DNA from: Obrimoposthia wandeli
Lineage: Eukaryota
Direction of reading: 5' to 3'
Assembly (NCBI GenBank): GCA_977020255.1
Contig: CDROCS010003952.1
Span: 124,001-188,000 of the forward strand
Length of the DNA stretch: 64,000 nt
Made by a program: the position numbers and the translations under genes. Below are positions 13,752 through 29,483 of the stretch, in pieces. Every line of letters starts with the position of its first letter. Position 1 is the first letter of the stretch. The notes beneath the pieces are model-generated. The model was not told where the DNA came from, made no database searches, and saw nothing but the letters and a program-made list of their open reading frames with translations.

Positions 13752-15806
13752 CTATAGCGTTTTAGATACGCTATAGCGTTGGCCGCGATAATCCCCCGAT
13801 ATAATCACCTCTTTAACGCCTTCTATATTAGTGGCACTTGTTGGTCGCCACTGCAGGTCAATATCACTAAATTGTTGGCTAATCACATCCTCTTCGCCAA
13901 TATCTCGTAGTAATTCTGCAAGCGTCATATTTGTTAATGAAGCACCGGACTTTGTTGACCAATTTTGTAGCAAGTCTTTAGATAACATCTGCTTGGCAAC
14001 CTTGATTGGTAACCCCGTCAAATTATCAAATTGAATGTAATCAATTGCCCTTAAACGACTAATAATGATGCGATTACTGAGCATGCTCATACCGTATACA
14101 TTACGTTGTGTATAAGCTTGCGAGTAGATAATCGATTTTGACTCATTATCAATAAGGTACAAGTTTTTATTTGTTAACGCAGCACTATATTTACCCGTCG
14201 GGTCGGAAGTGAGTTTAAGCACATTTTCAGCTAATGCTAATGTTGCGATTGATGAACCTTGCGCAATATCAATCCAGCTGAGGATATTAGTTTTATCGCT
14301 GACAATTAGATGCTTATCGTTATTGACGAATGCGGCTTTATCTATGTCATTTTTTATTATTTCACTTTGTAAATTCAAGGTTTGAGCATTAATCACAACC
14401 GCTGGAGTACCAGTATTTTGCAGCACGAATAATGATTTTTGTTGCTTACTTAATATGAGTACTGGCTGAGTTGAAGATAGATCATAACTATTACCAGTAG
14501 GCTTTAAAGTACCGCCAACTAACTGTTTTAATTCAGCACTTTGTCCATAATAACCTTTGCTAAATACTGCCGCCACTGTGTTGTGGTTCTGAGAGACGAT
14601 TAACTCATTGATATGGTTGTTTTTACAGTCTGCAGATGAAACCGGCAATACTGGCACGACTACAGGGGGCTTGGATCCTCCGGATGCACGACTATAGGTA
14701 CTAATTTTAGGTGCTGAAGACAAAGGGGAAGCTTGACTGTTTTTGCCTAATTCGGTTAAGAAAATACCGTTATTACCAGTAATATTGCAGGTAGCGCTCA
14801 TGGTCTTATCGCCATAAATCGTTGGCTGATAGATCAAATAAGCATTTTTATTATGGTCGCCTTGAGCGGCTGATAAAATGGCTGATGCCGGTTGGGTTGT
14901 GCCGCCGCCATTGCAGTCATCGCCGAAAAGGGAACCGTAATCATCATCATCATCACAATCATCTCCATCGTGATCATCATCATCATCATCATCGTCGTCA
15001 TCATGGTCATCGTATGTGCTTATCACAGGCGATGTTTGCGTGGTCGTTGCAGGGGTAAATGTATTGCTTAATCCTGTGGTGGTATCAATTTGTAGCAATT
15101 TGTCGCCAGAGGTAAGCGCAAGTAACATGCCGGTATTTTCATTCATCGTGATTGCACGACCACTGGATAGCGTACGTATCGGATATGAACCAGGAATTAA
15201 ATAGCGCTTATTTAAGTTCACATAGGTATTATCTAAATCTGCTTGTTGCAAGCTTCCTGTTATATCAAAATTACCGCTACTTACCATTTTATCAACAGCA
15301 GCTGAGATTTTTAACGCTTTAGAATCCCCCTCTAATGACAATGCATGGGCAAAAGAAGCGAGTAATAGATTAGTCGCTTCTTTTGGTCCATGCTCGGTAT
15401 TTAGCTTATGAAAATCAAGATTATATTGATCCCCAAATAGCTGTTGTAAATGCGCTTGTGCTTGCGCAACACTACCGGAAACTTGTGGGTTAAATAACAC
15501 TTCATTTTGAATCAATGTCGTAAACGGACTCACTACATTGGCACTTGCTGGTGCGGTAAGTAAATATGCCACATTATCGATGACGAATGGAGCTGTGTTA
15601 TCAGCCGCAACACTCCATAAGCTTGACACCTTTTGTTCTTGAGCTCCGCAAGCATAATTACGATCTGCATCGACACAAATTGATAATTTACTGTAGTCAT
15701 AGAGATCTGATTTTGTATTACTGCTTTCTTCGCCGCCACAGCTAATCACGAGACTACATCCCGCTAGAATAACCGCTATTTTAGATAGTTTAAATTTTCC
15801 ATTCAT
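13752..15806 (-). CDS. Lipoprotein with Asp/His-rich tract and probable C-terminal beta-propeller
   Basis: Lipobox (LAGC or VISC), N-terminal module CVDADRNYAC...VSPFTTLI, tract DDHDDDDDDDDDDDHDGDDCDDDDD, repeated short beta-strand units in the C-terminal half. Confidence 0.75.
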   Translation of the reverse strand: MNGKFKLSKIAVILAGCSLVISCGGEESSNTKSDLYDYSKLSICVDADRNYACGAQEQKVSSLWSVAADNTAPFVIDNVAYLLTAPASANVVSPFTTLIQNEVLFNPQVSGSVAQAQAHLQQLFGDQYNLDFHKLNTEHGPKEATNLLLASFAHALSLEGDSKALKISAAVDKMVSSGNFDITGSLQQADLDNTYVNLNKRYLIPGSYPIRTLSSGRAITMNENTGMLLALTSGDKLLQIDTTTGLSNTFTPATTTQTSPVISTYDDHDDDDDDDDDDHDGDDCDDDDDYGSLFGDDCNGGGTTQPASAILSAAQGDHNKNAYLIYQPTIYGDKTMSATCNITGNNGIFLTELGKNSQASPLSSAPKISTYSRASGGSKPPVVVPVLPVSSADCKNNHINELIVSQNHNTVAAVFSKGYYGQSAELKQLVGGTLKPTGNSYDLSSTQPVLILSKQQKSLFVLQNTGTPAVVINAQTLNLQSEIIKNDIDKAAFVNNDKHLIVSDKTNILSWIDIAQGSSIATLALAENVLKLTSDPTGKYSAALTNKNLYLIDNESKSIIYSQAYTQRNVYGMSMLSNRIIISRLRAIDYIQFDNLTGLPIKVAKQMLSKDLLQNWSTKSGASLTNMTLAELLRDIGEEDVISQQFSDIDLQWRPTSATNIEGVKEVIISGDYRGQRYSVSKTL
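14941..15012 (-). repeat. In-frame (GAT)n/(GAC)n trinucleotide tract encoding poly-Asp with His/Cys
   Basis: Runs of TCA on the + strand at 14941-15012. Confidence 0.9.
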
Positions 15807-15909
15807 ATAGATAACACTTTGTTGATTGAAGTTTTATACCGGATACCTTTTGGAAACCAGTCATTTTAATGTAAATAAAGATGATTAGTAAAATATATGA
15901 TCGAATACA

Positions 15910-15928
15910 ATTGATAATCACTCTCATT
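15910..15928. promoter_or_regulatory. Fur box
   Basis: ATTGATAATCACTCTCATT matches 15 of 18 defined positions of AATGATAATnATTATCATT; one mismatch is the common ATTCTC variant. Confidence 0.75.
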
Positions 15929-15939
15929 CCCGTTAGTAT
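15911..15939 (+). promoter_or_regulatory. sigma70 promoter of the DUF1566 lipoprotein/tad run
   Basis: TTGATA-N17-TAGTAT, ending 68 bp before ATG 16008; the -35 and spacer are overlapped by the Fur box. Confidence 0.65.
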
Positions 15940-16007
15940 ATGCGAAAATTTATGTTTGACTATAGTTTTCATAAAGTTATTTACATTTCAATAAAAGGGA
16001 TAGGTAA

Positions 16008-19000
16008 ATGTTGTTAGGAGTAAATAAATCACTGCTCGCGTTCACAGTGATTTCAGGTTCGTTGTTAACGGGTTGTAATGAAGCAAGCCCAGATCAAAAA
16101 TCGACAAATCCGACACAAAAAGTCGTTAAACCAGATGCTCCAGTCGGACCTATCGTGAATGATGACCTTGATCAGTTTGGCTGGTCTTGGAGTCGTAATT
16201 TTAGTGATAAACAATTTTATGAAATCAAAATACCCAATCAACCCTGGTCGAACGTCAATGGTAATCCGCATCAACTGGTTGTTGATGGTGTTTATGCTGT
16301 TGGTGATATTCAAATTCGTGTAAAGGCAGACTCAAGTAGTAACCGAGCAGCGAGTGATGTACTGGTTAATGCCGCTATTTATACCGCTGATTCAGCGATA
16401 AAACGCCCTAAATCGCCTACTAATCCAGTTCAGAATGACAGCTTGAATACCTTTGGTTGGGACCTCGTTACTGGTTTTAACGATGTTAGCGAGTATGAAT
16501 ACTCACTGACTGGCGGTGTTGATTGGACAACTGTTGCTAGCAAACCTTTAAACGTTGGTGATGTTGATATTGATGCTGGACATGTGCAAGTACGTGTTAA
16601 AGCAAATCCAGCAGTGGGTACATTAGCTGGTTCAATCTTAATTAGCTCACAAGCATTTACAGCTGGTGTGCCGGTTGTCATTGCCGCGCCAACATCGCCT
16701 GATATTGTTAACAAATACATCGGTTCCTACAATGAAGTTAAAACAAATGGTTTTAGTTGGGATTGGGTAACGAATAGTAATACTAAGGTTACTTACGATG
16801 AACCTGAGTATTACGAATTTACCAATGATGGTGGAACAACCTGGCAGGCTGCGACGTACAAGCCTCAGCATATTGGTCCTAAAGCTTATGATAAAACCCA
16901 AGTTGGTGTACGTATTAAGAAAAACGCAATCGCGAATCAGGTGAACCCTGTTGGCGAAATATTGTTTGCAACAGCAGCGAGCGAAAAGTTTTATGTTACA
17001 CGTGTAGTATCAATGAAAACCTGGAATCAGGCTCAAGATTTAACATCATCAGGCAACTGGTCTAAGGCGAAAGATGATGGCTGTTATATTGAATATGATG
17101 TTAATGGCGAAAATCCACAGTTTTGGGCTTATGCAGGCAAAAATTCTAGCGCGAATAAGGTGTCTGCATTATTAACTACAGAATTTTGTAATATACCAAA
17201 CTGGTCGTTACTCGACTCGACAGAAATGAAAGCTAAAACTTTAGTTGATTCGAGTTATATCTCAAGCACGTTTAGTCGCTATTTAATTACTAACTCTACA
17301 TCGTATGGTATTGCTTATTGGGCTGTTGAAAAAACGGGTGATGCTAAGATATGGAAGAAAATACAAGCGGGTAAGGAAATAACGAATGCAAGCGCGAAAG
17401 TAATTTTAAATTGGACACTACCAGATACAGCAACAATAGTAACAGAAAGTGCATCAACGGACGCTGATATCAAGGCATTAGTATCGTTACAAAATGGTAA
17501 CTGGCAAACGACCTCGACTGATTTGATTGCTGTTATTAATAAAATTGCAGCGTTAGCGGGTCAATCTTTGACGCCATTATTATCTGACGTGACAGCTGCG
17601 GAAGGCAAAGCGAAAGCGGTATTTGATTTACTTACGTTAGCGTTAGTTGAATACCAAAAAAAGTTCGACGTATTAACACTTTACTCAACTATGCTCGAAA
17701 GTGATAGCAGTATTGATAATGCGCTTAAAGCAACGATTAATGCCAATATCGCCTCGGCTAAAGTAGCATTTATTAATTTAACAGCATTACATACGACATT
17801 TAAATCAGCACTAAAAGTGACGCCAGCATTAACCGCATTGATTAAGTTAACAGATCAAAATACCAGCGCAAATACGGCTAAAGATGCATTAATAGCGGCC
17901 AATGATGGGGCTGATATTCATGCGAAGAGTTTGGATCTATTCGCTGCTGCAGCTGCAATAACTGATTTCATCAATGCAAATATTAAGCTCACTACCGACC
18001 TGAATAAGGCCATTAATGAATTGCCGACAGTAAATAATAGCGGATTAATCTCAGCGCTAGACAAATTGTTAATTATGTTTAGCAATTTACCAATCGCTGC
18101 AGATGTTAAAGCGTTAGACGATCACGCGTTAGCTGGATTGAAACGAGCAGCAGATGCAGGTTATAAAGCCCTTGCTGCGGATGCTGTAATCGGTACTCAC
18201 TTTGCTAAATTAGACATCAATGGTGATTATTTACCAAGTACCACGACGTATGCGCAAGGTTGGCGCTGTGTGATGGATAACCGCGATCCTATTCGTAAAC
18301 GTATTTGGACATTACTTAAAGACGGACTACCAAATGGTGCAGATGATTTGGCATTTGATGCTTCAGGTGCTGGTATTGCAAGTGTGATGGGCGTTGGTGG
18401 TTTAGTTGAATCGACAAAAATAGCACAACTATGTGGACGTAATAACTGGTCATTACCAAGTAAAAAACAGCTAATTTCATTGGAAACAGGCGTGATTAAG
18501 AGTTATGCAACAATCGATGTTGACGTATTCCCTAATCACCTTGCTTTTAAGCCAGAATATGACATCAATGATTGGCTATCCGGTGCTTTACCTGCAACAA
18601 AATTTTGGTATTGGACTGCTGAAAAACGTAGCAGTGAACAGATAACTTATCATTATAAAACAGCTAATAACGATTCATCAACAGGCTCTGAATCAACACA
18701 GGGTGATGAAGATGAAGTGGTTCTTGGGCGCTTAGTCAGTGAAATTGAATTGTCATACCAATTACTCGATAGTGCGGGTGTTGAAACGAGTAATGTTGAT
18801 GATGCTGTATGCGCTTATCAGCCGGAAACAAAGAAAACGTGGCAATTATTTGATACAGCTGATTTAGCGAAAAGAGCAAAATACTACGGTAACACAAGCG
18901 CTGATGCCGATACTGTATTAGCTGAAGTGGCACGTATTAATAACGTTCGTCTGTGTAATAAAAATAATTGGCAAGTACCTAGCTTAGCTGAATTAGAGTT

Positions 19001-19205
19001 ATTAGCACCTGTAGATCGCGTGGTGTTCCGTAACAGCAATGTTGAAAAATCGAGTACAACGCTTTGTTATGTTAGTGCTGATGCGCGGAATAGTAGTCAG
19101 AAGTGCTACAACATGAGTACTGATAAGACTTCTGATGTTGGTAGAATCAAGAATCCTTGGGGTTCGAGGATGTGGTATGTTTATCGTTTAATTACGTCTG
19201 ATTAA
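16008..19205 (+). CDS. Large outer-membrane lipoprotein adhesin: 3 beta-sandwich repeats, helical stalk, DUF1566 (Lcl/CLec-like) domains
   Basis: Lipobox LLTGC; three ~85-aa repeats (FGW...YE...W...QVRVKA); DUF1566-like motifs FCNIPNWSL, LCGRNNWSLPSKKQL, LCNKNNWQVPSLAEL; 8 non-lipobox Cys. Confidence 0.8.
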   Translation: MLLGVNKSLLAFTVISGSLLTGCNEASPDQKSTNPTQKVVKPDAPVGPIVNDDLDQFGWSWSRNFSDKQFYEIKIPNQPWSNVNGNPHQLVVDGVYAVGDIQIRVKADSSSNRAASDVLVNAAIYTADSAIKRPKSPTNPVQNDSLNTFGWDLVTGFNDVSEYEYSLTGGVDWTTVASKPLNVGDVDIDAGHVQVRVKANPAVGTLAGSILISSQAFTAGVPVVIAAPTSPDIVNKYIGSYNEVKTNGFSWDWVTNSNTKVTYDEPEYYEFTNDGGTTWQAATYKPQHIGPKAYDKTQVGVRIKKNAIANQVNPVGEILFATAASEKFYVTRVVSMKTWNQAQDLTSSGNWSKAKDDGCYIEYDVNGENPQFWAYAGKNSSANKVSALLTTEFCNIPNWSLLDSTEMKAKTLVDSSYISSTFSRYLITNSTSYGIAYWAVEKTGDAKIWKKIQAGKEITNASAKVILNWTLPDTATIVTESASTDADIKALVSLQNGNWQTTSTDLIAVINKIAALAGQSLTPLLSDVTAAEGKAKAVFDLLTLALVEYQKKFDVLTLYSTMLESDSSIDNALKATINANIASAKVAFINLTALHTTFKSALKVTPALTALIKLTDQNTSANTAKDALIAANDGADIHAKSLDLFAAAAAITDFINANIKLTTDLNKAINELPTVNNSGLISALDKLLIMFSNLPIAADVKALDDHALAGLKRAADAGYKALAADAVIGTHFAKLDINGDYLPSTTTYAQGWRCVMDNRDPIRKRIWTLLKDGLPNGADDLAFDASGAGIASVMGVGGLVESTKIAQLCGRNNWSLPSKKQLISLETGVIKSYATIDVDVFPNHLAFKPEYDINDWLSGALPATKFWYWTAEKRSSEQITYHYKTANNDSSTGSESTQGDEDEVVLGRLVSEIELSYQLLDSAGVETSNVDDAVCAYQPETKKTWQLFDTADLAKRAKYYGNTSADADTVLAEVARINNVRLCNKNNWQVPSLAELELLAPVDRVVFRNSNVEKSSTTLCYVSADARNSSQKCYNMSTDKTSDVGRIKNPWGSRMWYVYRLITSD

Positions 19206-19230
19206 TTCGGTATTTACCTGTTTATTATAA

Positions 19231-19254
19231 GGCAGTTAATGGAGATTAACTGCC
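19231..19254. other. Perfect hairpin between the lipoprotein gene and flp, no U-tract
   Basis: GGCAGTTAAT-GGAG-ATTAACTGCC followed by AAAACA. Confidence 0.7.
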
Positions 19255-19289
19255 AAAACACTCAACAATAACAATAATAGAGATGAAAA

Positions 19290-19469
19290 ATGAAAAACAA
19301 CAAACAAAAACAATGTGGTGCTGCAGCAATTGAATATGCCATTTTAGCGGCTGCAATGTCACTTATTATGCTGCAATTTTTTGGTTCTGACGGCAAGCTT
19401 TCGAATGCGATTGAGCAGACCTATGAGTCTGTCATTGAGAAACTGGATACAGTTAAAGCTGATAAATAA
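19290..19469 (+). CDS. flp: Flp (type IVc) major pilin, 59 aa
   Basis: Missed by the ORF track. MKNNKQKQCG|AAAIEYAILAAAMSLIMLQFFGSDGKLSNAIEQTYESVIEKLDTVKADK has the G|xxxxEY class III signal and sits first in the tad locus. Confidence 0.93.
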   Translation: MKNNKQKQCGAAAIEYAILAAAMSLIMLQFFGSDGKLSNAIEQTYESVIEKLDTVKADK

Positions 19470-19524: not shown

Positions 19525-20391
19525 ATGCATGCAAAACGTTTAGTTTATCTGTCTGTTTGTACGTCTTTACTTGGGTTGATTTGGCTATTTTTCAGCTTGT
19601 CAGCACCAGTGAAAAGCACGTCTAAACAGGATCTGGTTAAGAATTATGAAGTACTTGTTACCACGCAGGATATCACTATTGGTCGTCCTTATAGTGCCTC
19701 GTTATTTGCCTGGAAAACGGTAAATGAACAGGATGTTAGTTCCCGTATTGATTTTATTGATAAAGCCACATTTTTAATCTCGACATTAAAAAATACCGTG
19801 GCTGCGGATGATTTTGTCGCAGGACAAATATTAAGCCCGTCAGATTTTTTGAAACCTGAACAAGGTGGCTTTTTGTCAGTCATGCTACGTCCCAGTTATC
19901 GCGCAGTTTCAGTACCTGTTGATCAAGTAACGGCTAACTCTGGCTTAATTGGTCCTGGAGATCATGTTGATGTATTACTGCTGGCATCAAAAGAGCAAGA
20001 ACTTCGCTCTCGTGGTAATGAAACCCAAAGTTTATACGTTAAAACTATCGCACAGAACGTCCGAGTGTTGGCATTTAATGACGCCTTACAGCTTACGCGT
20101 TATATGGAAAAGCAAAAAAACAATAAAGGCGTACTTCCAGATAACAGTACCGTGACGTTAGAGGTGTCACCGAGACAAGCAAATCAAATTACGTTAGCCA
20201 ATCAACTGGGTACATTGTCGATGGTCTTACGCAGTAAAAACAATTTAGATACAGATAATGCGGTAATCGCAGCTATCAATGTCGATGATATTTTACCTGC
20301 AATTAAACAAGTCCAACCGGATATTGGTTTAGTTGAATTTCGCGCTAAAGAAAAACGAGTGATGAGTAATGCAGGAAACGAAAATGATTAA
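19525..20391 (+). CDS. cpaB: Flp pilus assembly protein CpaB/RcpC
   Basis: N-terminal TM, SAF domain, YRAVSVPVDQVTANSGLIGPGDHVDVLL, TVTLEVSP. Confidence 0.92.
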   Translation: MHAKRLVYLSVCTSLLGLIWLFFSLSAPVKSTSKQDLVKNYEVLVTTQDITIGRPYSASLFAWKTVNEQDVSSRIDFIDKATFLISTLKNTVAADDFVAGQILSPSDFLKPEQGGFLSVMLRPSYRAVSVPVDQVTANSGLIGPGDHVDVLLLASKEQELRSRGNETQSLYVKTIAQNVRVLAFNDALQLTRYMEKQKNNKGVLPDNSTVTLEVSPRQANQITLANQLGTLSMVLRSKNNLDTDNAVIAAINVDDILPAIKQVQPDIGLVEFRAKEKRVMSNAGNEND

Positions 20392-21781
20392 ACAATTAGT
20401 GAGCGCATTGTCGTTATTACTACTGAGCACAGTATTACAAGCGCAGACTTTGGATGTGGTATTAAACAAAGCGCGATTAGTGGTGCTGCCAAGTACAGCC
20501 AAGTCTATTTTCATTGCGAGTAGTGGTATTGCCGATTACCAAACTTTAACTAATACCAAGATCATGGTGTTCGGTAAAAAAACAGGAAGTACATCTTTGT
20601 ATGTACTGGATGCTAAAGAAAACGTTATTTATTCAGCAACAGTGAAGGTTAATCATAATGTCACAGAGCTTAACGATCTCATTCATGATGAATTTCCTGA
20701 TGCATTATTTAACGCCGAATCAACCGCCGGTAAGTTGTTTTTAAAAGGGCAAGTTCCGACAGCCAGCATGGCAGAAAAGATAGTTCGTTTATCTGAAGGT
20801 TATGTCTCTGCGTTAGCAACATCAAGTGAGGTTCCACAAGGTGCTAGTGCGGAAGGGGGGGCAGCTGCTGCCGCTCCAGTCGCTAAAACGGATGACGATG
20901 AATTGATCAATCAATTACAAGTCACCATGCCAAATCAAGTTAATTTGCGTATTCGTATTGCCGAGGTTTCTCGTAAAGTGTCTAACAAACTGGGCATTAA
21001 ATGGGGTTCACAAGGTTTTGGTACTGGTACATTTGCTTTTTTAGATAATTACGGCGGCAAACTTGGTGGTATGAACCCTGCAGGTTGGGCTGATCTGTCG
21101 GTCATTGTTGATGCATTGGCAACTAACGGCATGATGTCGGTGCTCGCAGAACCTAATTTAACCGCGATGAGTGGTGAAGAAGCTTCGTTTCTTGTTGGTG
21201 GCGAGATCCCGCTACCTTTGGTCTATAACGACACTGCATCAGTTGAGTATAAACAGTTTGGTGTGAAGCTTGATTTTAAACCGACGGTATTAAGTGCTAA
21301 CCAAATTAGCCTGCAAGTATTTTCTGAAGTCAGCACTGTCTCTTCGGAAACAAGTGTGCAAATTGGCGGGCAGGGAGGCAGTTCTTCATTCCCTACGTTT
21401 GTGACGCGCCGCGCTGCGACGACGGTAGAACTGGCCAGTGGTCAAAGCTTTGCACTAGGTGGTTTATTACAATCAAAAGATATTGAGCAGTTACAAAAAA
21501 TGCCACTGTTGGGTGATATTCCAGTACTTGGTGCGCTATTCCGTTCAACCGAATTTCAACGTGAAGAAACGGAACTCATTATTATTGCGACGGCTTATTT
21601 AGTGCAACCGACTCGTTCTGACACATTCGCGTTGCCAACAGACGGTTTGATCCCGATGAGTGATGTTGAACGGTTATTAGCGTGGCCAATAGACAAACAA
21701 ACAACAAGTTCAACAGCAAATGAAGATCGTACTGACAATCGCCAACCGCGACTGCTTGGCGATAACGGATTTTATTACTGA
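20384..21781 (+). CDS. cpaC: Tad secretin CpaC/RcpA
   Basis: Signal peptide from ATG 20384, QVNLRIRIAEVSR, LAEPNLTAMSGEEASFLVGGEIP, KMPLLGDIPVLGALFRS. Confidence 0.95.
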   Translation: MIKQLVSALSLLLLSTVLQAQTLDVVLNKARLVVLPSTAKSIFIASSGIADYQTLTNTKIMVFGKKTGSTSLYVLDAKENVIYSATVKVNHNVTELNDLIHDEFPDALFNAESTAGKLFLKGQVPTASMAEKIVRLSEGYVSALATSSEVPQGASAEGGAAAAAPVAKTDDDELINQLQVTMPNQVNLRIRIAEVSRKVSNKLGIKWGSQGFGTGTFAFLDNYGGKLGGMNPAGWADLSVIVDALATNGMMSVLAEPNLTAMSGEEASFLVGGEIPLPLVYNDTASVEYKQFGVKLDFKPTVLSANQISLQVFSEVSTVSSETSVQIGGQGGSSSFPTFVTRRAATTVELASGQSFALGGLLQSKDIEQLQKMPLLGDIPVLGALFRSTEFQREETELIIIATAYLVQPTRSDTFALPTDGLIPMSDVERLLAWPIDKQTTSSTANEDRTDNRQPRLLGDNGFYY

Positions 21782-21788
21782 GGTAGTT

Positions 21789-22418
21789 ATGCGGATATTT
21801 TCGATATTAATAATGTGTGGTTTGTTGAGTGCCTGTGCAATTGATTCTGTACAGCGCCAACCAGAAGTTCAAGTAGAAGCAGTTACTCACAAAATAGCGT
21901 TACAACTGGATCAAAAGGGATTATCACAAAGTGATCAAGCCGCGTTGAGTGAATTTATTTATCAACGTGGTGATTCGTCAGCGTTGCGCATAAAAATAGC
22001 CACTTATAACAACAAAGGGGTGAGAGCTATACCTGCATTAACGGCATTATTAAAACAGGCTGGTGTGTATCCATCTCAGGTAACGAGCGAAGCGGGTGAA
22101 ACATCGACGGTAGCGGATGTCGCCTTATTCGTTGAATCTTATCGTAGCCTTGTACCGAATTGTGTGGCAGGGAAGCAGAAACACAGTGTGTTAAATGAAT
22201 TCAAATCGAGTTCTAATTTTGGTTGCGCCAATGCGAGTGCTTTAGCGCAAATGGTTGCAACACCAAGAGATCTTGCTGTTGGGCGTACGCTCGATGCAAC
22301 AGAGGGCCGTAAAGCTGTATCAAGAGTGGATACTTATTATCAGCCAACGACTAGCAACAGCGAACAAGCAGATAAAAATAACAGCAGTAGTATTTCGTCT
22401 AGCTTAGGAGGGCTGTAA
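21789..22418 (+). CDS. cpaD: Pilus lipoprotein CpaD/RcpB
   Basis: GAGGT RBS, lipobox LLSAC, PNC...NFGCANASALAQMVATPRDL. Confidence 0.85.
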   Translation: MRIFSILIMCGLLSACAIDSVQRQPEVQVEAVTHKIALQLDQKGLSQSDQAALSEFIYQRGDSSALRIKIATYNNKGVRAIPALTALLKQAGVYPSQVTSEAGETSTVADVALFVESYRSLVPNCVAGKQKHSVLNEFKSSSNFGCANASALAQMVATPRDLAVGRTLDATEGRKAVSRVDTYYQPTTSNSEQADKNNSSSISSSLGGL

Positions 22419-22420
22419 TA

Positions 22421-23239
22421 ATGCAAGCGTCTAATCCAATCGCGAATGATCATGTAAAGCGTCATAAGATCGCAGTCGTGAGTGCCAAAGGTGGCGCTGG
22501 TACAACCTCGTTAATCGCCAATATTGCGTGGGGTTTATCTCAATTGAGTCAGACCAGAGTCGCTTGTGCAGATCTTGATTTTTTGACAGGTGATTTAGAC
22601 TTACAATTCAGTGTACAAGCGAACAACGCATTGCTAGAAATGCTGCAATTTCCAGACCGTTTAGAGCCTGTTATCTATCAACGTAGCGGGGTTAAAGTTA
22701 ATGATGATTTATACCTATTTACCGGTTATGCATCTGGTTTTGAACTGCATTTTTGGCCTGATATTACAAGTATGGATAAAGTGTCTGATTTTTGCCTTGA
22801 ACAAGCAAACCATGTGATTTGGGATATTCCTGCATTCTGTTTACGCGATAAAGTGGGCTTTGAAACGTTAAATCGCAGTGATATTCGCGTGGTGATTGTT
22901 GAACCTACATTGGCATCTATCCGCAGTACCAACCAGCTATTGACGAAATTAGCATCTACAGGCGCATTAGATACTCGCACGATAGTGGTACTTAATCACA
23001 CCAAACCCGAAGCACAATCTTTAATTACGGCTAATGATGTTGCGGCGACTTTGGACCGTAAATTGGATGTTGAAATCCCGTATTCTCCAGAGGATATGCG
23101 GACAGGTAATGCGCTCGGTTTATTGGCTATTAATCAAAAAAGTCGCAGTGCAAAAGCATTGAAAAAATTGGTTGCTGTTATTAGTGGTGAATCAAAAGTA
23201 TCAAAGCCTAGTGTGTTTAGCTGGCGTAAGGGGGCGTAA
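22421..23239 (+). CDS. tadZ: MinD-like pilus localisation protein TadZ/CpaE (no receiver domain)
   Basis: Deviant Walker A SAKGGAGTTS, ADLDFLTGD, VEPTLASIR; position in the locus. Confidence 0.85.
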   Translation: MQASNPIANDHVKRHKIAVVSAKGGAGTTSLIANIAWGLSQLSQTRVACADLDFLTGDLDLQFSVQANNALLEMLQFPDRLEPVIYQRSGVKVNDDLYLFTGYASGFELHFWPDITSMDKVSDFCLEQANHVIWDIPAFCLRDKVGFETLNRSDIRVVIVEPTLASIRSTNQLLTKLASTGALDTRTIVVLNHTKPEAQSLITANDVAATLDRKLDVEIPYSPEDMRTGNALGLLAINQKSRSAKALKKLVAVISGESKVSKPSVFSWRKGA

Positions 23240-24594
23240 TGTTTGGAACTAATACAGTCACACCGACGCCAACAGAGTCATTACTGACATTATCTGTATC
23301 CACAGATGTTGCGGACGTAACACCTAGCAATAATGTTGAAGAGCAACGTTTTCGTGTTATCCAACAAGAGATAATGGCGATTATTGCTCCTGCTGTCGTT
23401 GTCACGCTGACGCCTGAAGAACTTGAAGTTCGCACGTTTGAAGCCGTCGGTGATATTGCTGCTCGTCAGCAATTTCCAATTGGGGGGACTGAGCAGCGTA
23501 ATATCAGCCAGCGCCTTGTTGATGAAATGTTGGGGTTGGGGCCTTTACAGGTGTTAATGGATGATCCTGAGATAACAGACATCATGGTTAATGGTCATAC
23601 CGAGGTATTCGTTGAATATCGCGGTAAGGTCAAGCGCGCTGATGTTCGCTTTCGCGATGAAGAACATGTATTGAATTTAGCGCGCCGAATAGTAAGCCGT
23701 ATCGGTCGCCGTGTGGATGAAACAACGCCGATGGTTGATGCGCGTTTACCCAATGGCAGCCGTGTGAATGTGCTTATTCCACCATTGGCATTAAATGGTA
23801 CGTGTATTTCTATCCGTAAATTTAATGAGCAAAAACATAGCTTGCAGCAACTTGCTGCGCTCGGGGCTATGTCGTCTGATATGGCGGATGTGTTGAATAT
23901 TATTGCTCGTTCTCGAGTTAATGTATTGATTTCGGGTGGTACAGGTGCCGGTAAAACGACATTACTGAATGCGTTGTCGTTTGGTATTTCCCCCGACGAA
24001 CGCATCATTACGATTGAAGATGCTGCAGAATTAAAGTTACAGCAACCGCACGTGGTGAGTATTGAGACAAGGCCTGCCAATGTCGAAGGCGCTGCAGCCA
24101 TTGGTCAGCGAGAATTGTTACGTAATGCATTACGGATGCGTCCTGACCGAATTATTTTAGGTGAAGTCCGTGGCGCTGAAGCGTTTGATATGATGCAGGC
24201 AATGAATACTGGTCATGATGGTTCTATGTCAACGCTGCATGCTAATACGCCGCACGATGCGTTAATCCGTTTAGAGAACATGTTGTTAATGGCAGAGGTT
24301 AATTTACCTGTGTCTGCTTTACGCCGCCAAATCGCTAGCACTTTGGATGTGGTTGTACAAGTGGAACGTATGCGAGACGGTAAACGTCGAGTGGTAAATA
24401 TTACCGAAGTAGTCGGCCTCGAAGGCGATCAATACCTTACTCATGATTTGTTCCATTTTGATTATCAGAAAATGGACGTTAATGGCGATCTTGTTGGTGA
24501 GTTTCTATCCACGAAAATCTTGCCGCGTTTTAATGAAAAGGCGCGTTACTACCAACTTGAATCTCAGTTGAAACAAGCCATGGGAGTGCGATGA
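23239..24594 (+). CDS. tadA: Pilus assembly ATPase TadA/CpaF
   Basis: [48 protein letters not shown]. Confidence 0.97.
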
Positions 24595-25526
24595 TGTCAG
24601 TCATGGTGACAGGCCTGTTGTTATTGATTATGTTTGTGTTTAGTAGTTATAAAGCCTTACAGCATCAGCGTCAACGACAGGTATTAAAGCGTCGGTTAAG
24701 CTCGATATCAGCAGTGAATAGTACAGATAGTAAAGCGACGTCAACTTTATTTCATTGGGCGCAAAAAACGAGCCCTTTATTACAATATGGTCACGATCTG
24801 AAAGCGCGTATCGACGCCTTATTTAACCGTAAAGCTAAGCGTGTTCTACAATTATTGTTAGCAATTTTGGCTGTTGTTGTCTGGTTTACGTTATCTTTTT
24901 TTACGCCATTAATGAGAATGATGATTATTGCGATTATCATATTATCGGTATTGGCTGTGAGCTATTGGATCATGACTGTGCGTCAACATAGTGAATTTAA
25001 TGCTGGTTTCACGCAAGTATTAGGTCAAATGTCACGGGCTGTGTCGGCAGGTATTTCAGTGCCGCAAGCTATCGCTCAAATAGCGGATTATCAACAAGGG
25101 ATATTGGGTCGCGAGTTTGGTTTGATCCGCGATAAATTAGAGATTGGTATAGGCCTAAAGCAAGCGCTAAACCAGGCCCGTATTCGTTTGCCTTATGTGA
25201 GTTTTCATTTCTTTAGTGTGGCATTAATTTTGAACGAAGAGAATGGTGGTCAGCTGCGAGAGGTATTACATAGTTTGAGTCGAACAGTGCATGACAACTC
25301 CGCTATTAAGATGAAGATCAGAAGTTTAACTGCCGAACCGCGCATGACGGCCGCAATTTTAGCAAGCTTGCCGGTCGTCCTTATCTCGGTGATGTTCTTT
25401 AAAAATCCCAGTGCATTTATTACGTTAACTCAAAACCCTAGCGGGCATTTAGTCTTAGGTTATGTGTTTACCAGTATGGCGCTTGGTTTTGCGATTATTC
25501 ATTTGTTAACGAAGGTGAGAGCTTAA
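24591..25526 (+). CDS. tadB: Inner-membrane platform protein TadB
   Basis: T2SS-F-like MSRAVSAGISVPQA, EENGGQL, SLTAEPRMTA. Confidence 0.92.
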   Translation: MMSVMVTGLLLLIMFVFSSYKALQHQRQRQVLKRRLSSISAVNSTDSKATSTLFHWAQKTSPLLQYGHDLKARIDALFNRKAKRVLQLLLAILAVVVWFTLSFFTPLMRMMIIAIIILSVLAVSYWIMTVRQHSEFNAGFTQVLGQMSRAVSAGISVPQAIAQIADYQQGILGREFGLIRDKLEIGIGLKQALNQARIRLPYVSFHFFSVALILNEENGGQLREVLHSLSRTVHDNSAIKMKIRSLTAEPRMTAAILASLPVVLISVMFFKNPSAFITLTQNPSGHLVLGYVFTSMALGFAIIHLLTKVRA

Positions 25527-26416
25527 TGTCTTTATCTTTATGGATTGCCGTTACTTTGCTTATTACTGGCGCGGTCATGGCACTGTTATTTAGTGCGCCA
25601 GCACAGCGCCGTGAGCAGTTATTAAAGCGACTGCTATTAGTATCGGCATCGGCACCGCAGAAATACCGACCTCTTAGTCTCAGTAAATCATCGTCAAAAA
25701 TTGGCTGGTTACGCCGTTTAACTGTCGCGCCTGATATTAGCGCATTATTGGTTAAAGCTGGGTTTCATGGTTCAAGAGCAAGCGCTACGTTTTTATTGTG
25801 CAAATTAAGCTTAATGCTGATTAGTGCGATGGCGTGGCAATGGTATGTCGATTTTGATACCGATAAATTCGTCATGGCTAAGACTATTATCTTTGCTATT
25901 TCTGGCGGACTTGTTGCTGAACAATGGTTGAAATGGCGCGCTCGCACGGTTAATTACCGTATTGCGCTAGCGTTGCCTGATGCGCTTGATTTAATGGTTA
26001 TCTGTGTCGAATCAGGTTTAACCTTGGAAGCCGTATTTCAACGTGTTGGCCGTGAAATGGCTGCAGTTACTCCTGAGTTATCACGTGAATGGTTAATCAC
26101 TGAAGCGGAGTTACGTTTATTGGACTCTCGTATTACGGCATTAAATAACTTGGCAGAGAGAACGGGTTTAGTGGAAGTTGAAAACATGGTTATCGCCTTA
26201 TCTCAAGCTGAAAAATATGGCAGTAAGATAGCGCCAACGATGCGTTTAATCGCCAGTGACAGCCGTCAATATCAATATTTACGTCTAGAAGAGAGAGTCG
26301 GTAAGATCCCCGCGAAAATGTCATTACCTGTGGTGGTATTAATCATGCTGCCTGTAGTCGTCCTGATTGTTTCACCAACGATCATCGCATTATTAGATAG
26401 CCTTGGAGGTATGTGA
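25526..26416 (+). CDS. tadC: Inner-membrane platform protein TadC
   Basis: LPDALDLMVICVESGL, QAEKYGS, KMSLPVVVLIMLP. Confidence 0.93.
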   Translation: MSLSLWIAVTLLITGAVMALLFSAPAQRREQLLKRLLLVSASAPQKYRPLSLSKSSSKIGWLRRLTVAPDISALLVKAGFHGSRASATFLLCKLSLMLISAMAWQWYVDFDTDKFVMAKTIIFAISGGLVAEQWLKWRARTVNYRIALALPDALDLMVICVESGLTLEAVFQRVGREMAAVTPELSREWLITEAELRLLDSRITALNNLAERTGLVEVENMVIALSQAEKYGSKIAPTMRLIASDSRQYQYLRLEERVGKIPAKMSLPVVVLIMLPVVVLIVSPTIIALLDSLGGM

Positions 26417-27222
26417 TGAAAAAGTCACTGGTGAAAGTGTTTATTATGTTTGGCTTGCTCATGTTATCTGGCTGTAGCACTAATCAATTAAGCCAAACCG
26501 AAGAAATGCACTCGGATCGTGACCTAGCAAAGTTGGCACTTGATAGTGGCCGACCAGACAGTGCGATCTCTATTTATCGTAAGCAACTTGATTTACAACC
26601 AAACGATACCGAGCTGTTGCTAGCGATAGGGACTGCTTACAACCAAATGTCTGAATTTGATTTAGCACTGCATTATCTTAATCAAGCACAAGCGTTGATG
26701 TTAACTGAGACTAATAAGTCATCTGTGATACATGGTCAAATATTACGTGAAAGAGGTAATGCACTGCAAGGTTTAGGTAACTTAGAGGGCGCTATTTTAG
26801 ATTTAAAAAAAGCGGCTGAATTATTACCTAAAGATGCTAAAGCATTAAACAGTTTAGGTATTAATTACGCCTTGTTTAAGGACTACCCTCAAGCAAGAAT
26901 CGCGTTCACAGGCGCGCTTGCTAATGCACCTGACAATTTAGAATACCGTAATAATTTAGCACTCGCTTGGATTTTAGATGGGCAACCACAGCAAGGTATC
27001 GATGTGCTTTATTCACATTACTTACGTGGTAGTTCGACGTCTAAAAGCCGTCAGAATTTGGCCTTGGCCTTTGCGATGAAGGGCGATGTCGAAGCTGCAG
27101 AAACCATTGCAAAACAAGATCTAACGAAAGCTGAATTAGAAAATAACCTTGCTTATTATCGGCAGCTTTATCAAGGCCTGTTACAGCAAGAACCGTTATT
27201 GACAGAGCAGATTAAACAATGA
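26413..27222 (+). CDS. tadD: TPR lipoprotein pilotin TadD
   Basis: Lipobox LSGC, TPR repeats, RNNLALAW, RQNLALA. Confidence 0.9.
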   Translation: MMKKSLVKVFIMFGLLMLSGCSTNQLSQTEEMHSDRDLAKLALDSGRPDSAISIYRKQLDLQPNDTELLLAIGTAYNQMSEFDLALHYLNQAQALMLTETNKSSVIHGQILRERGNALQGLGNLEGAILDLKKAAELLPKDAKALNSLGINYALFKDYPQARIAFTGALANAPDNLEYRNNLALAWILDGQPQQGIDVLYSHYLRGSSTSKSRQNLALAFAMKGDVEAAETIAKQDLTKAELENNLAYYRQLYQGLLQQEPLLTEQIKQ

Positions 27223-27689
27223 GTCTGTCTAACATGAGAAATCGTCAGCGAGGTGGCGTTAGTATTGAATTTGCAGTGACAATTGTGCCATTTTTTGTAT
27301 TGCTGTTGGGATTGATCGAAATTAGCCGCTTTATGATGGTGAGCAGTATGGCTGATGTGGCCTTAGCTTCTGCAACGCGAGAGTTAGTGGTGGATAATTC
27401 GCGTGAAGATTTAACCGCCAAATTACAATTAACCTTGTCAGAGCTGCAGTTACCATTATTGAATGGTAACGAGATTACTGTTCAAGCACATTATTTTACC
27501 AGTTTGGTGGCATTAGAAAATGATGATTTTGTAGGCACCTTTGGTGGAGAGAATTTCGCTGAATTTACCTTGTTGTATCCGTATGAAGCGCTATTTGTTG
27601 CAGGTTTTTCTGATAGCTTTGAGCGTTTATCAAACTTTAAACGCACGACGTTAGTGACTGTAGAGCGGAGTGCTAATTATGCGAACTAA
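27219..27689 (+). CDS. tadE: Pseudopilin TadE
   Basis: QRG|GVSIEF class III signal followed by a hydrophobic helix. Confidence 0.88.
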   Translation: MSLSNMRNRQRGGVSIEFAVTIVPFFVLLLGLIEISRFMMVSSMADVALASATRELVVDNSREDLTAKLQLTLSELQLPLLNGNEITVQAHYFTSLVALENDDFVGTFGGENFAEFTLLYPYEALFVAGFSDSFERLSNFKRTTLVTVERSANYAN

Positions 27690-28290
27690 ACGCAGCCCGT
27701 ATACAGCTCAACGCGGTAGTAGTGTCATCGAGTTCCCTATCATTACATTAGTGATGGTTATCCTTGTTTTATTTGTCATAAAGATAAATCAAGGGATCAA
27801 CCACAAGAACCAACTTAATGCGTTAGCTTATTCACTGACATCAATTGTGGCTTGTGCTGAATGTGATAATGGCATGAATAAGCCAGCTTCAAGTCCTGTT
27901 ACTCCAGGTGTCATTCCGGACCTAGTAGCGGATTCATTATTCCAAGTTGCACAGCGGCATTTCAACGATTTAATTGTTGAATCGTCAGCTGATATTGGGC
28001 TTCAAGTTGAAAGGCTGGTCTTTGATCCTTCAACCAAAAACTCAAAACCGTACTCTTTAAATAGAGGGGTAGAATGTGACGCAGCTACGTCATTATCATC
28101 ATTAGAGGATTTATCACCCTTAGGGAAAAGGTCGGGCATAAATGCTGGACAGCAGGCTGAATTATTTCAAGTCACCCTGTGTATTAAGGGTGTCGAGAGC
28201 TTTGGTAATGGTATTACCCCTTTATTTATACGTAACTTCAGTGACCGTTATTATCAAAGCTCGGCGTTATTAATAGGGCGTAAAATATGA
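27670..28290 (+). CDS. tadF: Pseudopilin TadF
   Basis: QRG|SSVIEF class III signal; 4 Cys. Confidence 0.85.
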   Translation: MLIMRTKRSPYTAQRGSSVIEFPIITLVMVILVLFVIKINQGINHKNQLNALAYSLTSIVACAECDNGMNKPASSPVTPGVIPDLVADSLFQVAQRHFNDLIVESSADIGLQVERLVFDPSTKNSKPYSLNRGVECDAATSLSSLEDLSPLGKRSGINAGQQAELFQVTLCIKGVESFGNGITPLFIRNFSDRYYQSSALLIGRKI

Positions 28291-29483
28291 TGTCCATATC
28301 ACGTCAACGTGGCGCAATAGCACTCACATTCACGTTTATGTTACCCGCGATTATGAGCTTATTAGCCATGACGGTGTTTTTTTCGATGTACAGCCAAGTT
28401 GTGATTAGAACGGGTCAAGCTGCTGAAGCCGCAGGGCTTGCCTGCGGGTATCAGCAAAGTGATGAGCGAACCGTTATTGACGGTATTTTAGATTATTACC
28501 GCCCTAATTTTGTGCTGCCTGCGCTTGGTAATAGTGTCAGCTTGGATGGTGATAAGGGTTGTAATATATCAGTGCAATATCATTTTAAACCGGCAATGAA
28601 CAAATTACTGCCAGTTGAAGTTAACAGTTCAAGCTTAGTTACATCAAACAGCGGTTCTAGCGCCAAATTAGTGGAGAATGTTGCGAATGTTATTCAAAAG
28701 CCTACCGATTTTTCACTCGTTCTTGATATTTCAGGTTCGATGGGATCGGATTTACCTGAATTAAAAAGAATCATTACCGATGTGATAAGTGACATTGACC
28801 CAAGTAATAATCAAGTTCGTTTTTCTATTGTGCCTTTTCAAACCGGAGTGGGGGTGATGGCAGCACCTTGGCTTTCGAGCTCTAAAGCAAGTCCTAAGTG
28901 TGTTGATGGCTTGGCTTATCGCAATGGGAATTTCGATGCAGATAAAACCGTGAAATTGTTAAATTCGCCATCCAAAAATCTTGATTTTAAAGAGGTTACA
29001 CCAGGACCTTGGTTAGACCGTTGCAGTAGTACGGCATTTATTTTACCGCTGACCAACGATCTTAATAGCGTAATTGATTATGTCAACAAGCTCAGTACCA
29101 GTGGTACTACCGCGTCTTACCAAGGCTTTATTTGGGGTGTGAGAACGCTTACTGAACAATGGCAGCAGGAATGGAAGATTACCCCTGTGACATCTTCGTC
29201 ACTAACTCAACGATTAATTTTGTTTACCGATGGGTCTGATAACGGCGGTGGGCATTTTGATGACCTAATGAATGCGGGTTTATGTGACGAAATCCAACAA
29301 AACTTAAACATTGTAGTGAGTTTTATCGGTTTTGGTGTATCAGCTAATCGTATTAAGCAATTTCAACAATGCGCAGGCCGTCTTGGTGCGGTGTTTGACG
29401 CTAAAGATAGTCGCGATCTAGCCGGTTATTTTGAGAAGGCACTTAAGGTTGAATCCAAGCCTAGGCTCGTATTGGGTCAGTAG
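28287..29483 (+). CDS. tadG: TadG with vWA domain
   Basis: QRG|AIAL N-terminus, MIDAS motif VLDISGSM, GTT, LFTDG; 6 Cys. Confidence 0.9.
   Translation: MMSISRQRGAIALTFTFMLPAIMSLLAMTVFFSMYSQVVIRTGQAAEAAGLACGYQQSDERTVIDGILDYYRPNFVLPALGNSVSLDGDKGCNISVQYHFKPAMNKLLPVEVNSSSLVTSNSGSSAKLVENVANVIQKPTDFSLVLDISGSMGSDLPELKRIITDVISDIDPSNNQVRFSIVPFQTGVGVMAAPWLSSSKASPKCVDGLAYRNGNFDADKTVKLLNSPSKNLDFKEVTPGPWLDRCSSTAFILPLTNDLNSVIDYVNKLSTSGTTASYQGFIWGVRTLTEQWQQEWKITPVTSSSLTQRLILFTDGSDNGGGHFDDLMNAGLCDEIQQNLNIVVSFIGFGVSANRIKQFQQCAGRLGAVFDAKDSRDLAGYFEKALKVESKPRLVLGQ

What the first reader, a model, noticed from the sequence alone, without database searches (positions are those of the whole stretch)
15910..15939. 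Fur box on the -35 of the adhesin/tad promoter, between two divergent lipoprotein genes
Seen: ATTGATAATCACTCTCATT (15/18 consensus positions) overlaps TTGATA-N17-TAGTAT. It lies ~80 bp before the DUF1566 gene and ~104 bp before the divergent Asp/His-rich lipoprotein. Established: Fur represses by occluding -35/-10 elements. Inference: both arms are induced by iron starvation.
Basis: partly seen in the sequence, partly recalled or inferred. Interest (0 to 1): 0.7.

Follow-up and report, generated by a model that had tools for sequence, protein, structure and literature searches.

The report
Conserved Fur box heading tad locus
A binding site for the iron-sensing repressor Fur sits on the promoter of an adhesin gene that heads a pilus (tad) gene cluster in a marine Moritella bacterium, and other genera keep the same layout, so the cluster is very probably switched on by iron starvation: well supported, but a familiar kind of regulation.

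Summary
ATTGATAATCACTCTCATT lies at 15910-15928. It matches 15 of 18 positions of the Vibrio-type Fur consensus and overlaps TTGATA-N17-TAGTAT. It is 80 bp from the Lcl_C/DUF1566 lipoprotein gene and 104 bp from the divergent Asp/His-rich lipoprotein gene.

The contig is a Moritella in a metagenome-like assembly. I built a PWM from Fur boxes in front of iron-uptake genes of the closest reference genome. The site scores 17.7 bits (15.0-15.7 with stricter training sets). Only 7 positions in 800 kb score as high, all intergenic. Chance predicts 0.1-2 such sites in the whole genome's intergenic DNA.

The box is kept in 9 of 10 Moritella sequences. The whole module (lipoprotein, box, adhesin, flp-rcp-tad) also recurs in four genomes outside the genus, with proteins 30-75% identical. 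There the only conserved island in the intergenic DNA is the box plus the -10 hexamer, at fixed spacing.

Published work shows iron-limitation induction of a Vibrio vulnificus tad locus and lists DUF1566 genes in the V. parahaemolyticus Fur regulon.

The Fur-operator reading is supported in silico. Co-transcription of tad and Fur control of the leftward gene are plausible but not shown. No RNA data exist. This is a new member of a known kind.

The parts
15910..15928 (.). Fur box (operator): ATTGATAATCACTCTCATT, an imperfect 7-1-7 inverted repeat matching 12 of 14 core positions
   Evidence: PWM score 17.7 bits, with chance expectation 0.14-0.34 per genome's intergenic DNA, or 15.0-15.7 bits and 1.1-2.1 expected with stricter training sets. 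At least 15.7 bits in 9 of 10 Moritella sequences. An orthologous box of 15.8-18.6 bits in four genomes outside the genus.
15911..15916 (+). -35 hexamer TTGATA of the rightward (adhesin) promoter, inside the Fur box
   Evidence: Invariant in all Moritella sequences and in the four other genomes.
15934..15939 (+). -10 hexamer TAGTAT, 17 nt after the -35; the predicted start is near 15946
   Evidence: TAnTAT is kept at the same distance from the box in the window, a second Moritella (G009) and the four other genomes; the MAG G001 has TTTTAT. The transcription start is not measured.
16008..19205 (+). 1065-aa lipoprotein with three N-terminal repeat domains and an Lcl_C (DUF1566) C-terminal region; putative adhesin
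   Evidence: Homologues sit in the same position in 9 Moritella genomes and 4 other genomes.
13752..15806 (-). 684-aa divergent lipoprotein: helical N-domain, a 7-bladed beta-propeller, and a conserved disordered poly-Asp/His insert (about residues 252-307)
   Evidence: No Pfam or NCBIfam family. Homologue alignment, model, generic propeller matches. Always divergent from the adhesin gene.
15940..15985 (.). Block invariant within Moritella, downstream of the -10. It could be a leader, a second operator, or part of a minus-strand promoter (TAGTCA-16-TATACT, 15962..15935).
   Evidence: Not conserved outside the genus. Function unknown.
19231..19254 (+). 10-bp stem-loop between the adhesin stop and flp, without a U tract
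   Evidence: fold z-score -2.8 for 19200-19295; no terminator-like site.
19290..19469 (+). flp pilin gene
   Evidence: (Flp_Fap, 31.2 bits, just under the 32.2 cut-off), plus its position ahead of rcpC.
19525..29483 (+). tad pilus genes: rcpC/cpaB, secretin rcpA, cpaD, tadZ-like ParA ATPase, tadA, tadB, tadC, TPR tadD, tadE, tadF, VWA tadG
   Evidence: The same order follows the adhesin gene in four genomes outside the genus.

Best explanation
The 19-mer at 15910-15928 is a genuine Fur operator. With iron present, Fe2+-Fur dimers bind the imperfect inverted repeat. They cover the -35 hexamer and spacer of the sigma-70 promoter TTGATA-N17-TAGTAT and block transcription of the Lcl_C/DUF1566 adhesin lipoprotein gene. 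In iron starvation Fur leaves and the gene is transcribed. Transcription probably reads through a terminator-less hairpin into flp and the tad pilus genes. The divergent Asp/His-rich propeller lipoprotein gene is probably controlled by the same operator. Shown here, in silico: the site, its score against background, its conservation, and the conserved gene module. Inferred: Fur binding, the transcription start, repression, read-through into tad, and control of the leftward gene.
For: (1) The sequence and promoter hexamers are as described.

(2) M. dasanensis (G002) has 38 sites with up to 3 mismatches, against 17 for the reversed pattern. The best sites precede a Mn/Fe ZnuA-like binding protein, three TonB-dependent receptors, FeoB, a Peripla_BP_2 protein, an Fe3+-type SBP, IucA/IucC, PepSY_TM and DUF3450 of a TonB system. 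So the motif is the organism's Fur box.

(3) On a PWM from those ten sites the candidate scores 17.7 bits. This is inside the leave-one-out range of 13.7-25.1. Only 7 positions in 800 kb score as high, all intergenic. Chance expectation is 0.14-0.34 per 680 kb of intergenic DNA, and the reversed PWM finds none. The result holds with stricter training sets.

(4) The 19-mer is identical in 6 of 10 Moritella sequences whose flanks are only 76-96% identical, and scores at least 15.7 bits in 9 of 10.

(5) The module lipoprotein / box / adhesin / flp-rcp-tad recurs in four genomes outside the genus (proteins 30-75% identical). Each has a 15.8-18.6-bit box in the divergent intergenic region. In a six-way alignment, 24 of 32 invariant columns fall in 15904-15939, which is the box plus the -10.

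(6) Fur is present: G002 has a Fur gene, and the window's own assembly has a 95%-identical copy.

(7) There are precedents. V. vulnificus flp-1 (tad1) is induced about 131-fold by iron limitation (PMC6748444; also PMC7137831). Two DUF1566 genes are listed in the V. parahaemolyticus Fur regulon (PMC12341060). A second Moritella Lcl_C locus has a strong Fur box conserved in five genomes.
Against: There is no experimental evidence for this locus: no RNA run holds it, and there are no binding data.

The site is at the weak end of the regulon, with 3 mismatches. Its right half is ACTCTCA against the ideal ATTATCA.

The PWM training sites were first found with the same consensus, so the score is partly circular.

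Within Moritella a whole block of about 80 bp is conserved, not just the box, so within-genus conservation alone is not specific.

One Moritella MAG (G001) has lost the right half-site (9.2 bits) while keeping an intact adhesin gene.

Most other Lcl_C loci in Moritella have no Fur box.

The leftward promoter is unresolved. A hairpin separates the adhesin gene from flp.
Confidence: 0.8

Rival explanations
1. The sequence is only promoter DNA: a -35 hexamer plus an AT-rich spacer. It is conserved because it is a promoter, it resembles a Fur box by chance, and Fur does not regulate the locus.
For: TTGATA is a good -35 in its own right. Fur boxes are AT-rich and promoter-like. The reversed-pattern control still gives 17 genome hits at up to 3 mismatches. 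With stricter PWMs, chance predicts 1-2 such sites per genome. The MAG G001 tolerates loss of the right half-site.
Against: Outside the genus the right half-site (TATCATT / TATCGTT) is conserved, and it lies in the spacer, where a sigma-70 promoter has no sequence requirement. In G158, G083 and G290 an extra upstream hexamer extends the array. No position in 690 kb of coding DNA, and no non-candidate intergenic position without a plausible target, scores as high.
Confidence: 0.1
2. The inverted repeat is the operator of another dimeric regulator. This could be the second Fur-family protein (probably Zur-like) or a locus-specific factor. The signal would then be a different metal or cue; the Asp/His-rich protein might suggest Zn, Ni or Ca.
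For: G002 encodes a second Fur-family protein. The divergent gene product has a conserved poly-Asp/His insert. A further block conserved within Moritella next to the box suggests additional regulators.
Against: The site scores within the range of boxes in front of iron-uptake genes of the same genome. Its conserved positions are the Fur core TGATAA...TATCA. From established knowledge, gammaproteobacterial Zur boxes have a different, longer palindrome, which I did not scan for.
Confidence: 0.07
3. Fur binds but controls only one arm: the adhesin gene alone. The tad genes would have their own promoter, and the leftward lipoprotein gene would start from a promoter outside the Fur footprint.
For: There is a stable hairpin after the adhesin gene. 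The best leftward promoter-like site (TTTACT-18-TAAAAT, 15892..15863) lies 18 bp beyond the box.
Against: There is no terminator-like site, only weak promoter-like matches (9 of 12, no more than in shuffles), and no second Fur box between the adhesin gene and flp, here or in seven related loci. The pairing of the two lipoprotein genes around the box is kept in every genome examined. In G001 the box has decayed where the leftward gene is broken. This is a refinement of the main explanation rather than an exclusive rival.
Confidence: 0.3

Closest known systems
Classical Fur operators at iron-uptake promoters of gammaproteobacteria (19-bp box; Vibrio-type palindrome AATGATAATNATTATCATT)
   Same: The same motif as in front of this genus's TonB-dependent receptors, feoB, iucA/C and other iron genes. 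It overlaps the -35 and spacer, the usual repression geometry. Fur is present.
   Different: The downstream genes are surface lipoproteins and a pilus system, not iron transporters. The box is a weaker variant, with 3 mismatches and GAGA in place of GATA in one half.
Vibrio vulnificus tad1 locus (flp-1), induced by iron limitation (PMC6748444; PMC7137831)
   Same: A tad/flp pilus locus of a marine gammaproteobacterium whose expression rises when iron is scarce. That is the behaviour predicted here.
   Different: In the passages read, the papers report expression and describe no Fur box or promoter. Whether tad1 carries the same lipoprotein / box / adhesin head could not be checked, because the genomes in the search tool are unnamed. 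Orthology is untested.
Vibrio parahaemolyticus Fur-regulon cluster VP_RS22185-22165: S9 peptidase, TonB-dependent receptor, P-domain protein and two DUF1566 proteins (PMC12341060)
   Same: DUF1566/Lcl_C proteins are listed as Fur-regulon members and co-vary with iron genes. A second Moritella Lcl_C locus likewise has a strong conserved Fur box.
   Different: There the DUF1566 genes follow a receptor and peptidases. Here the DUF1566 protein heads a tad pilus locus and is paired with a propeller lipoprotein.

Membership tests
Fur operator (Fur box) | Match to the organism's Fur-box motif clearly above genomic and intergenic background | tested here: met
   17.7 bits. 7 hits in 800 kb, all intergenic. 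Chance expectation is 0.14-0.34 per genome's intergenic DNA (1.1-2.1 with stricter PWMs), and the reversed PWM finds none.
Fur operator (Fur box) | Inverted-repeat (7-1-7) or NATWAT-hexamer architecture | tested here: met
   TGATAAT-C-ACTCTCA matches 12 of 14 core positions. Orthologues have ACTATCA or AATATCA, and three of them an extra upstream hexamer.
Fur operator (Fur box) | Overlap with core promoter elements of the regulated gene | tested here: inconclusive
   The box overlaps a consensus-predicted -35 and spacer, and the hexamers are conserved across genera at fixed spacing. No transcription start is measured, because no RNA run exists.
Fur operator (Fur box) | A Fur protein encoded by the organism | tested here: met
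   G002 Fur scores 149 bits on PF01475. A 95%-identical copy is on G000:C506 of the window's assembly. It was not shown that C506 and the window's contig are the same strain.
Fur operator (Fur box) | Metal-dependent Fur binding, and iron- or fur-dependent expression | not testable with these tools
   This needs EMSA or footprinting, FURTA, and qRT-PCR or RNA-seq with and without chelator.
tad/flp pilus locus | Flp pilin, RcpC/CpaB, secretin, TadZ, TadA ATPase, TadB/C, TadD-G | tested here: met
   Pfam hits. Flp_Fap is just under its cut-off (31.2 against 32.2 bits).
Lcl_C / DUF1566 domain proteins (PF07603) | Pfam match over the gathering score | tested here: met
   38.6 bits against a cut-off of 34.9, in two stretches, residues about 800-895.

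The most novel reading that the evidence does not exclude
The conserved Fur-controlled head of this tad subtype may be more than co-regulated adhesion genes. This head is a propeller lipoprotein with a poly-Asp/His insert plus an Lcl_C adhesin. With the Tad pilus it could form an iron-starvation-triggered system for attaching to, and perhaps scavenging iron from, iron-bearing particles or host surfaces. In that reading the acidic His-rich loop binds metal or mineral. This would be an undescribed iron-acquisition or attachment module shared by several marine gammaproteobacterial genera.
Probability: 0.15. Interest if true: 0.6.

Novelty: new member of a known kind. Interest (0 to 1): 0.4.

Why it matters
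If the operator works as predicted, iron scarcity is a cue for Tad-pilus and adhesin production in psychrophilic Moritella and in related marine genera. That links the chronic iron limitation of seawater to surface attachment. It would also give a promoter-level explanation for the iron-limitation induction of tad pili already measured in Vibrio vulnificus. Finally, it flags two uncharacterised surface lipoprotein families as members of the iron-starvation response: the Asp/His-rich propeller family and a subset of Lcl_C/DUF1566 proteins. The regulation itself (Fur over a -35) is textbook, so the gain is in regulon content, not mechanism.

Tried and rejected
- **"All Lcl_C loci have Fur boxes."** In G002 all three Lcl_C loci had a site with up to 3 mismatches upstream. 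The third (L060) scores only 12.4 bits, and its orthologues in four genomes have nothing. The small Lcl_C gene pairs also have none. The association holds only for two or three loci, so I dropped the general claim.
- **Second hit in the window (24911-24929, 16.3 bits).** It lies inside tadB, is lineage-specific, and reflects Met/Ile codons. I take it as chance.
- **RNA evidence for the start site.** No RNA run holds the stretch; there is only one contig-type DNA run, which cannot show starts.
- **Rfam scan of 15700-16150.** Nothing credible.
- **Function of the 684-aa lipoprotein.** Pfam and NCBIfam give no family. The protein atlas gives only unnamed clusters and weak propeller leads. Foldseek gives generic 7-bladed propellers.
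- **Similarity to another Fur-box-preceded unknown protein (L042).** None.
Alice et al. 2008 (PMC2519419) is not held.
- **The large protein searches** were not used, because the claim does not rest on them.

Full report
**What is there.** The window is G000:C3952:124001-188000. The assembly has 1.35 Gb in 6912 contigs and 34 Fur-family hits, so it is a metagenome-like mixture, not one genome. The contig is a Moritella. The 1065-aa protein after the site is 63-73% identical to proteins of Moritella dasanensis ArB 0140, a Moritella MAG and Moritella sp. JT01. The flanking DNA is 96% identical to two Moritella genomes.

ATTGATAATCACTCTCATT lies at 15910-15928, with 3 mismatches to AATGATAATNATTATCATT. 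It overlaps TTGATA-N17-TAGTAT at 15911-15939. To the right, 80 bp away, starts a 1065-aa lipoprotein with an Lcl_C/DUF1566 region. After it come flp and a complete tad set: RcpC, secretin, CpaD, TadZ-like ATPase, TadA, TadB, TadC, TPR TadD, TadE, TadF and VWA TadG. To the left, 104 bp away, starts a divergent 684-aa lipoprotein with no Pfam or NCBIfam family.

**Is the match more than chance?** A whole-assembly scan is meaningless for a metagenome: it gave 16,365 hits, against 13,081 for the control. I therefore used the closest reference genome, M. dasanensis (G002). G002 has 38 sites with up to 3 mismatches, against 17 for the reversed pattern.

I fetched all the sites and annotated their neighbours. 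The best sites precede:
- a Mn/Fe ZnuA-type binding protein;
- three TonB-dependent receptors;
- feoB;
- a Peripla_BP_2 protein and an Fe3+-type binding protein;
- IucA/IucC;
- a PepSY_TM protein;
- DUF3450 of a TonB system.

The motif is therefore this genus's Fur box.

A symmetrised PWM from those ten iron-gene sites gives the candidate 17.7 bits. The leave-one-out range of the training sites is 13.7-25.1. In 800 kb of G002 (110 kb intergenic by a greedy ORF mask) only 7 positions reach that score, and all are intergenic. Three are training sites. The others precede an S8 subtilase, precede an unknown 637-aa protein, or lie between convergent genes.

Chance expectation is 0.34 (independent bases) or 0.14 (first-order Markov) per 680 kb of intergenic DNA. 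A reversed PWM finds nothing at or above 16 bits. The training sites were first found with the same consensus, so I repeated the test with stricter training sets. The candidate falls to 15.0-15.7 bits, the same 7 intergenic positions remain, and chance rises to 1.1-2.1 per genome. That compares with roughly 40 sites extrapolated for the genome.

**Conservation within the genus.** Nine of 13 Moritella genomes have the locus. In the 10-sequence alignment the part of the intergenic region next to the leftward gene has diverged in the distant species. A block from about 15904 to 15985 is conserved in all ten. The 19-mer is identical in six sequences and scores at least 15.7 bits in nine. Six of the ten read GATAAT-N7-ATTATC, the outer hexamers of the classical 19-bp box.

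The exception is the MAG G001 (9.2 bits; its -10 is also weakened to TTTTAT). There the leftward lipoprotein gene is also broken by stops and a frame change. This is a single case in a MAG, so it is only suggestive. The whole block is conserved, so within-genus conservation alone does not single out the box.

**Conservation outside the genus: the strongest evidence.** I searched 301 genomes of the same order with the 684-aa lipoprotein. Full-length homologues (30-47% identical) turned up in five genomes outside the genus. In four of them (G158, G083, G290, G074) three things hold:
- the gene is again divergent from a homologue of the adhesin;
- flp-rcpC-rcpA-cpaD-tadZABC... again follows in the same order, with proteins 30-75% identical;
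- the 160-190-bp intergenic region again holds a Fur-like box of 15.8-18.6 bits.

The fifth genome (G211) has only an 11.7-bit site.

Anchored on the box, all share ATTGATAA...TATC(A/G)TT, then 5 nt, then TA(A/G/T)TAT. So the -35, the 17-nt spacing and the -10 are all kept, always pointing at the adhesin gene. In a six-way MAFFT alignment, 24 of the 32 invariant columns fall between window positions 15904 and 15939. The rest of the intergenic DNA is unalignable.

The conserved right half-site lies in the promoter spacer. RNA polymerase imposes no sequence requirement there, which argues for a bound dimeric protein with Fur specificity.

**Context that raises the prior.**
- Fur is present. G002 has Fur plus one other Fur-family protein. 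The window's assembly has a 95%-identical Fur on contig C506.
- A second Moritella Lcl_C locus (548-aa and 884-aa proteins) has a 1-mismatch box about 68 bp before its start. The box is conserved at 17.2-23.8 bits in five genomes, and G009 has a further Lcl_C gene behind a 21.3-bit box.
- Most other Lcl_C loci have none, so only a subset of the family is involved.
- In V. parahaemolyticus, two DUF1566 genes in a peptidase/TonB-receptor cluster are tabulated in the Fur regulon and co-vary with it (PMC12341060).
- In V. vulnificus, flp-1 of tad1 rises about 131-fold under dipyridyl (PMC6748444). tad genes are also reported as up in iron deficiency (PMC7137831).

**How it most likely works.** With iron present, Fe2+-Fur occupies 15910-15928, and probably neighbouring hexamers. 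It occludes the -35 and spacer of the rightward promoter. Iron starvation relieves this.

Between the adhesin stop and flp there is no terminator-like site and no second Fur box; promoter-like matches there are weak and no more frequent than in shuffles. There is only a 10-bp hairpin without a U tract. Read-through into tad is therefore plausible, perhaps with processing at the hairpin.

For the leftward gene there are two candidate promoters. One has its -10 (TATACT, 15940..15935) face-to-face with the rightward -10, which would put the box at about +1 to +20. The other (TTTACT-18-TAAAAT, 15892..15863) starts 18 bp beyond the box. In G158, G083 and G290 I read a possible TTGATC -35 for the leftward gene directly abutting the box; no tool scan was run on those loci. 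Co-control is likely but unproven.

**The leftward protein.** An alignment of nine homologues shows that the poly-Asp/His stretch is a family hallmark. The AlphaFold model (mean pLDDT 70.5) has a helical N-domain and a 7-bladed propeller, with the acidic stretch as a disordered insert. Foldseek returns only generic propellers, including a leptospiral surface antigen and an archaeal S-layer YVTN domain. Its function remains open; a metal- or surface-binding role is a guess.

**Verdict.** The Fur-operator reading is well supported computationally (about 0.8). Extension to tad and to the leftward gene is plausible. It is a new member of a known kind: Fur repression at a -35 is textbook, and iron-responsive tad pili are published. 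As far as my searches reached, the new element is a conserved, cross-genus, Fur-headed tad subtype with two uncharacterised lipoproteins.

Noticed in passing
window 24911-24929: A second Fur-like site (16.3 bits, 3 mismatches) lies inside tadB. It encodes Met-Arg-Met-Met-Ile-Ile of a membrane segment. It is present only in the window/M. dasanensis lineage, so it is probably a by-product of codon content.
   Followed up: yes
window 15940-15985: A 46-bp block just downstream of the -10 is invariant in all ten Moritella sequences but not kept in other genera. It contains TTGACT, which has no usable -10 on the + strand. It could be a leader element, a second operator or part of the leftward promoter.
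   Followed up: partly
window 19231-19254: A perfect 10-bp stem with a GGAG loop lies between the adhesin stop and flp, without a U tract. It may be a processing or stability element that sets the flp : adhesin mRNA ratio.
   Followed up: partly
window 13752-15806 (-), residues about 252-307: The poly-Asp/His insert is conserved as a feature, though not in sequence, in all nine homologues from at least five lineages. It is predicted disordered and sits in a 7-bladed propeller lipoprotein with no family assignment.
   Followed up: partly
L039 (G002:C8:181111-185129), with L122, L126, L134, L139: A second Lcl_C locus (about 548-aa and 884-aa lipoproteins) carries a near-perfect Fur box about 68 bp upstream. 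The box is conserved in five Moritella genomes, so a subset of DUF1566 proteins appears to belong to the Fur regulon.
   Followed up: yes
L047 (G002:C10:107319-107343; by offset about 0.5 kb past the window's end): A double, overlapping Fur box (21.6 bits) lies upstream of an S8 subtilase with a PA domain. This would be an iron-regulated secreted protease, like the peptidases in the V. parahaemolyticus Fur cluster.
   Followed up: no
L042 (G002:C1:110305) and L058 (G002:C9:126138): There are two further strong Fur boxes. One (20.7 bits) precedes a protein of at least 637 aa (ORF cut by the locus edge) with no Pfam or NCBIfam family. The other (19.8 bits) lies between two convergent genes, where a small iron-responsive RNA could sit.
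   Followed up: no
L150 / L034 (Moritella MAG G001): The Asp/His-rich lipoprotein gene is interrupted by stops and a frame change. In the same genome the Fur box has lost its right half (9.2 bits) and the -10 reads TTTTAT. This may be co-decay or MAG assembly error.
   Followed up: partly
G000 as a whole: The 'own genome' is a metagenome-like assembly of 1.35 Gb in 6912 contigs, with dozens of Fur genes. Whole-assembly motif counts therefore cannot serve as a background for this contig.
   Followed up: yes
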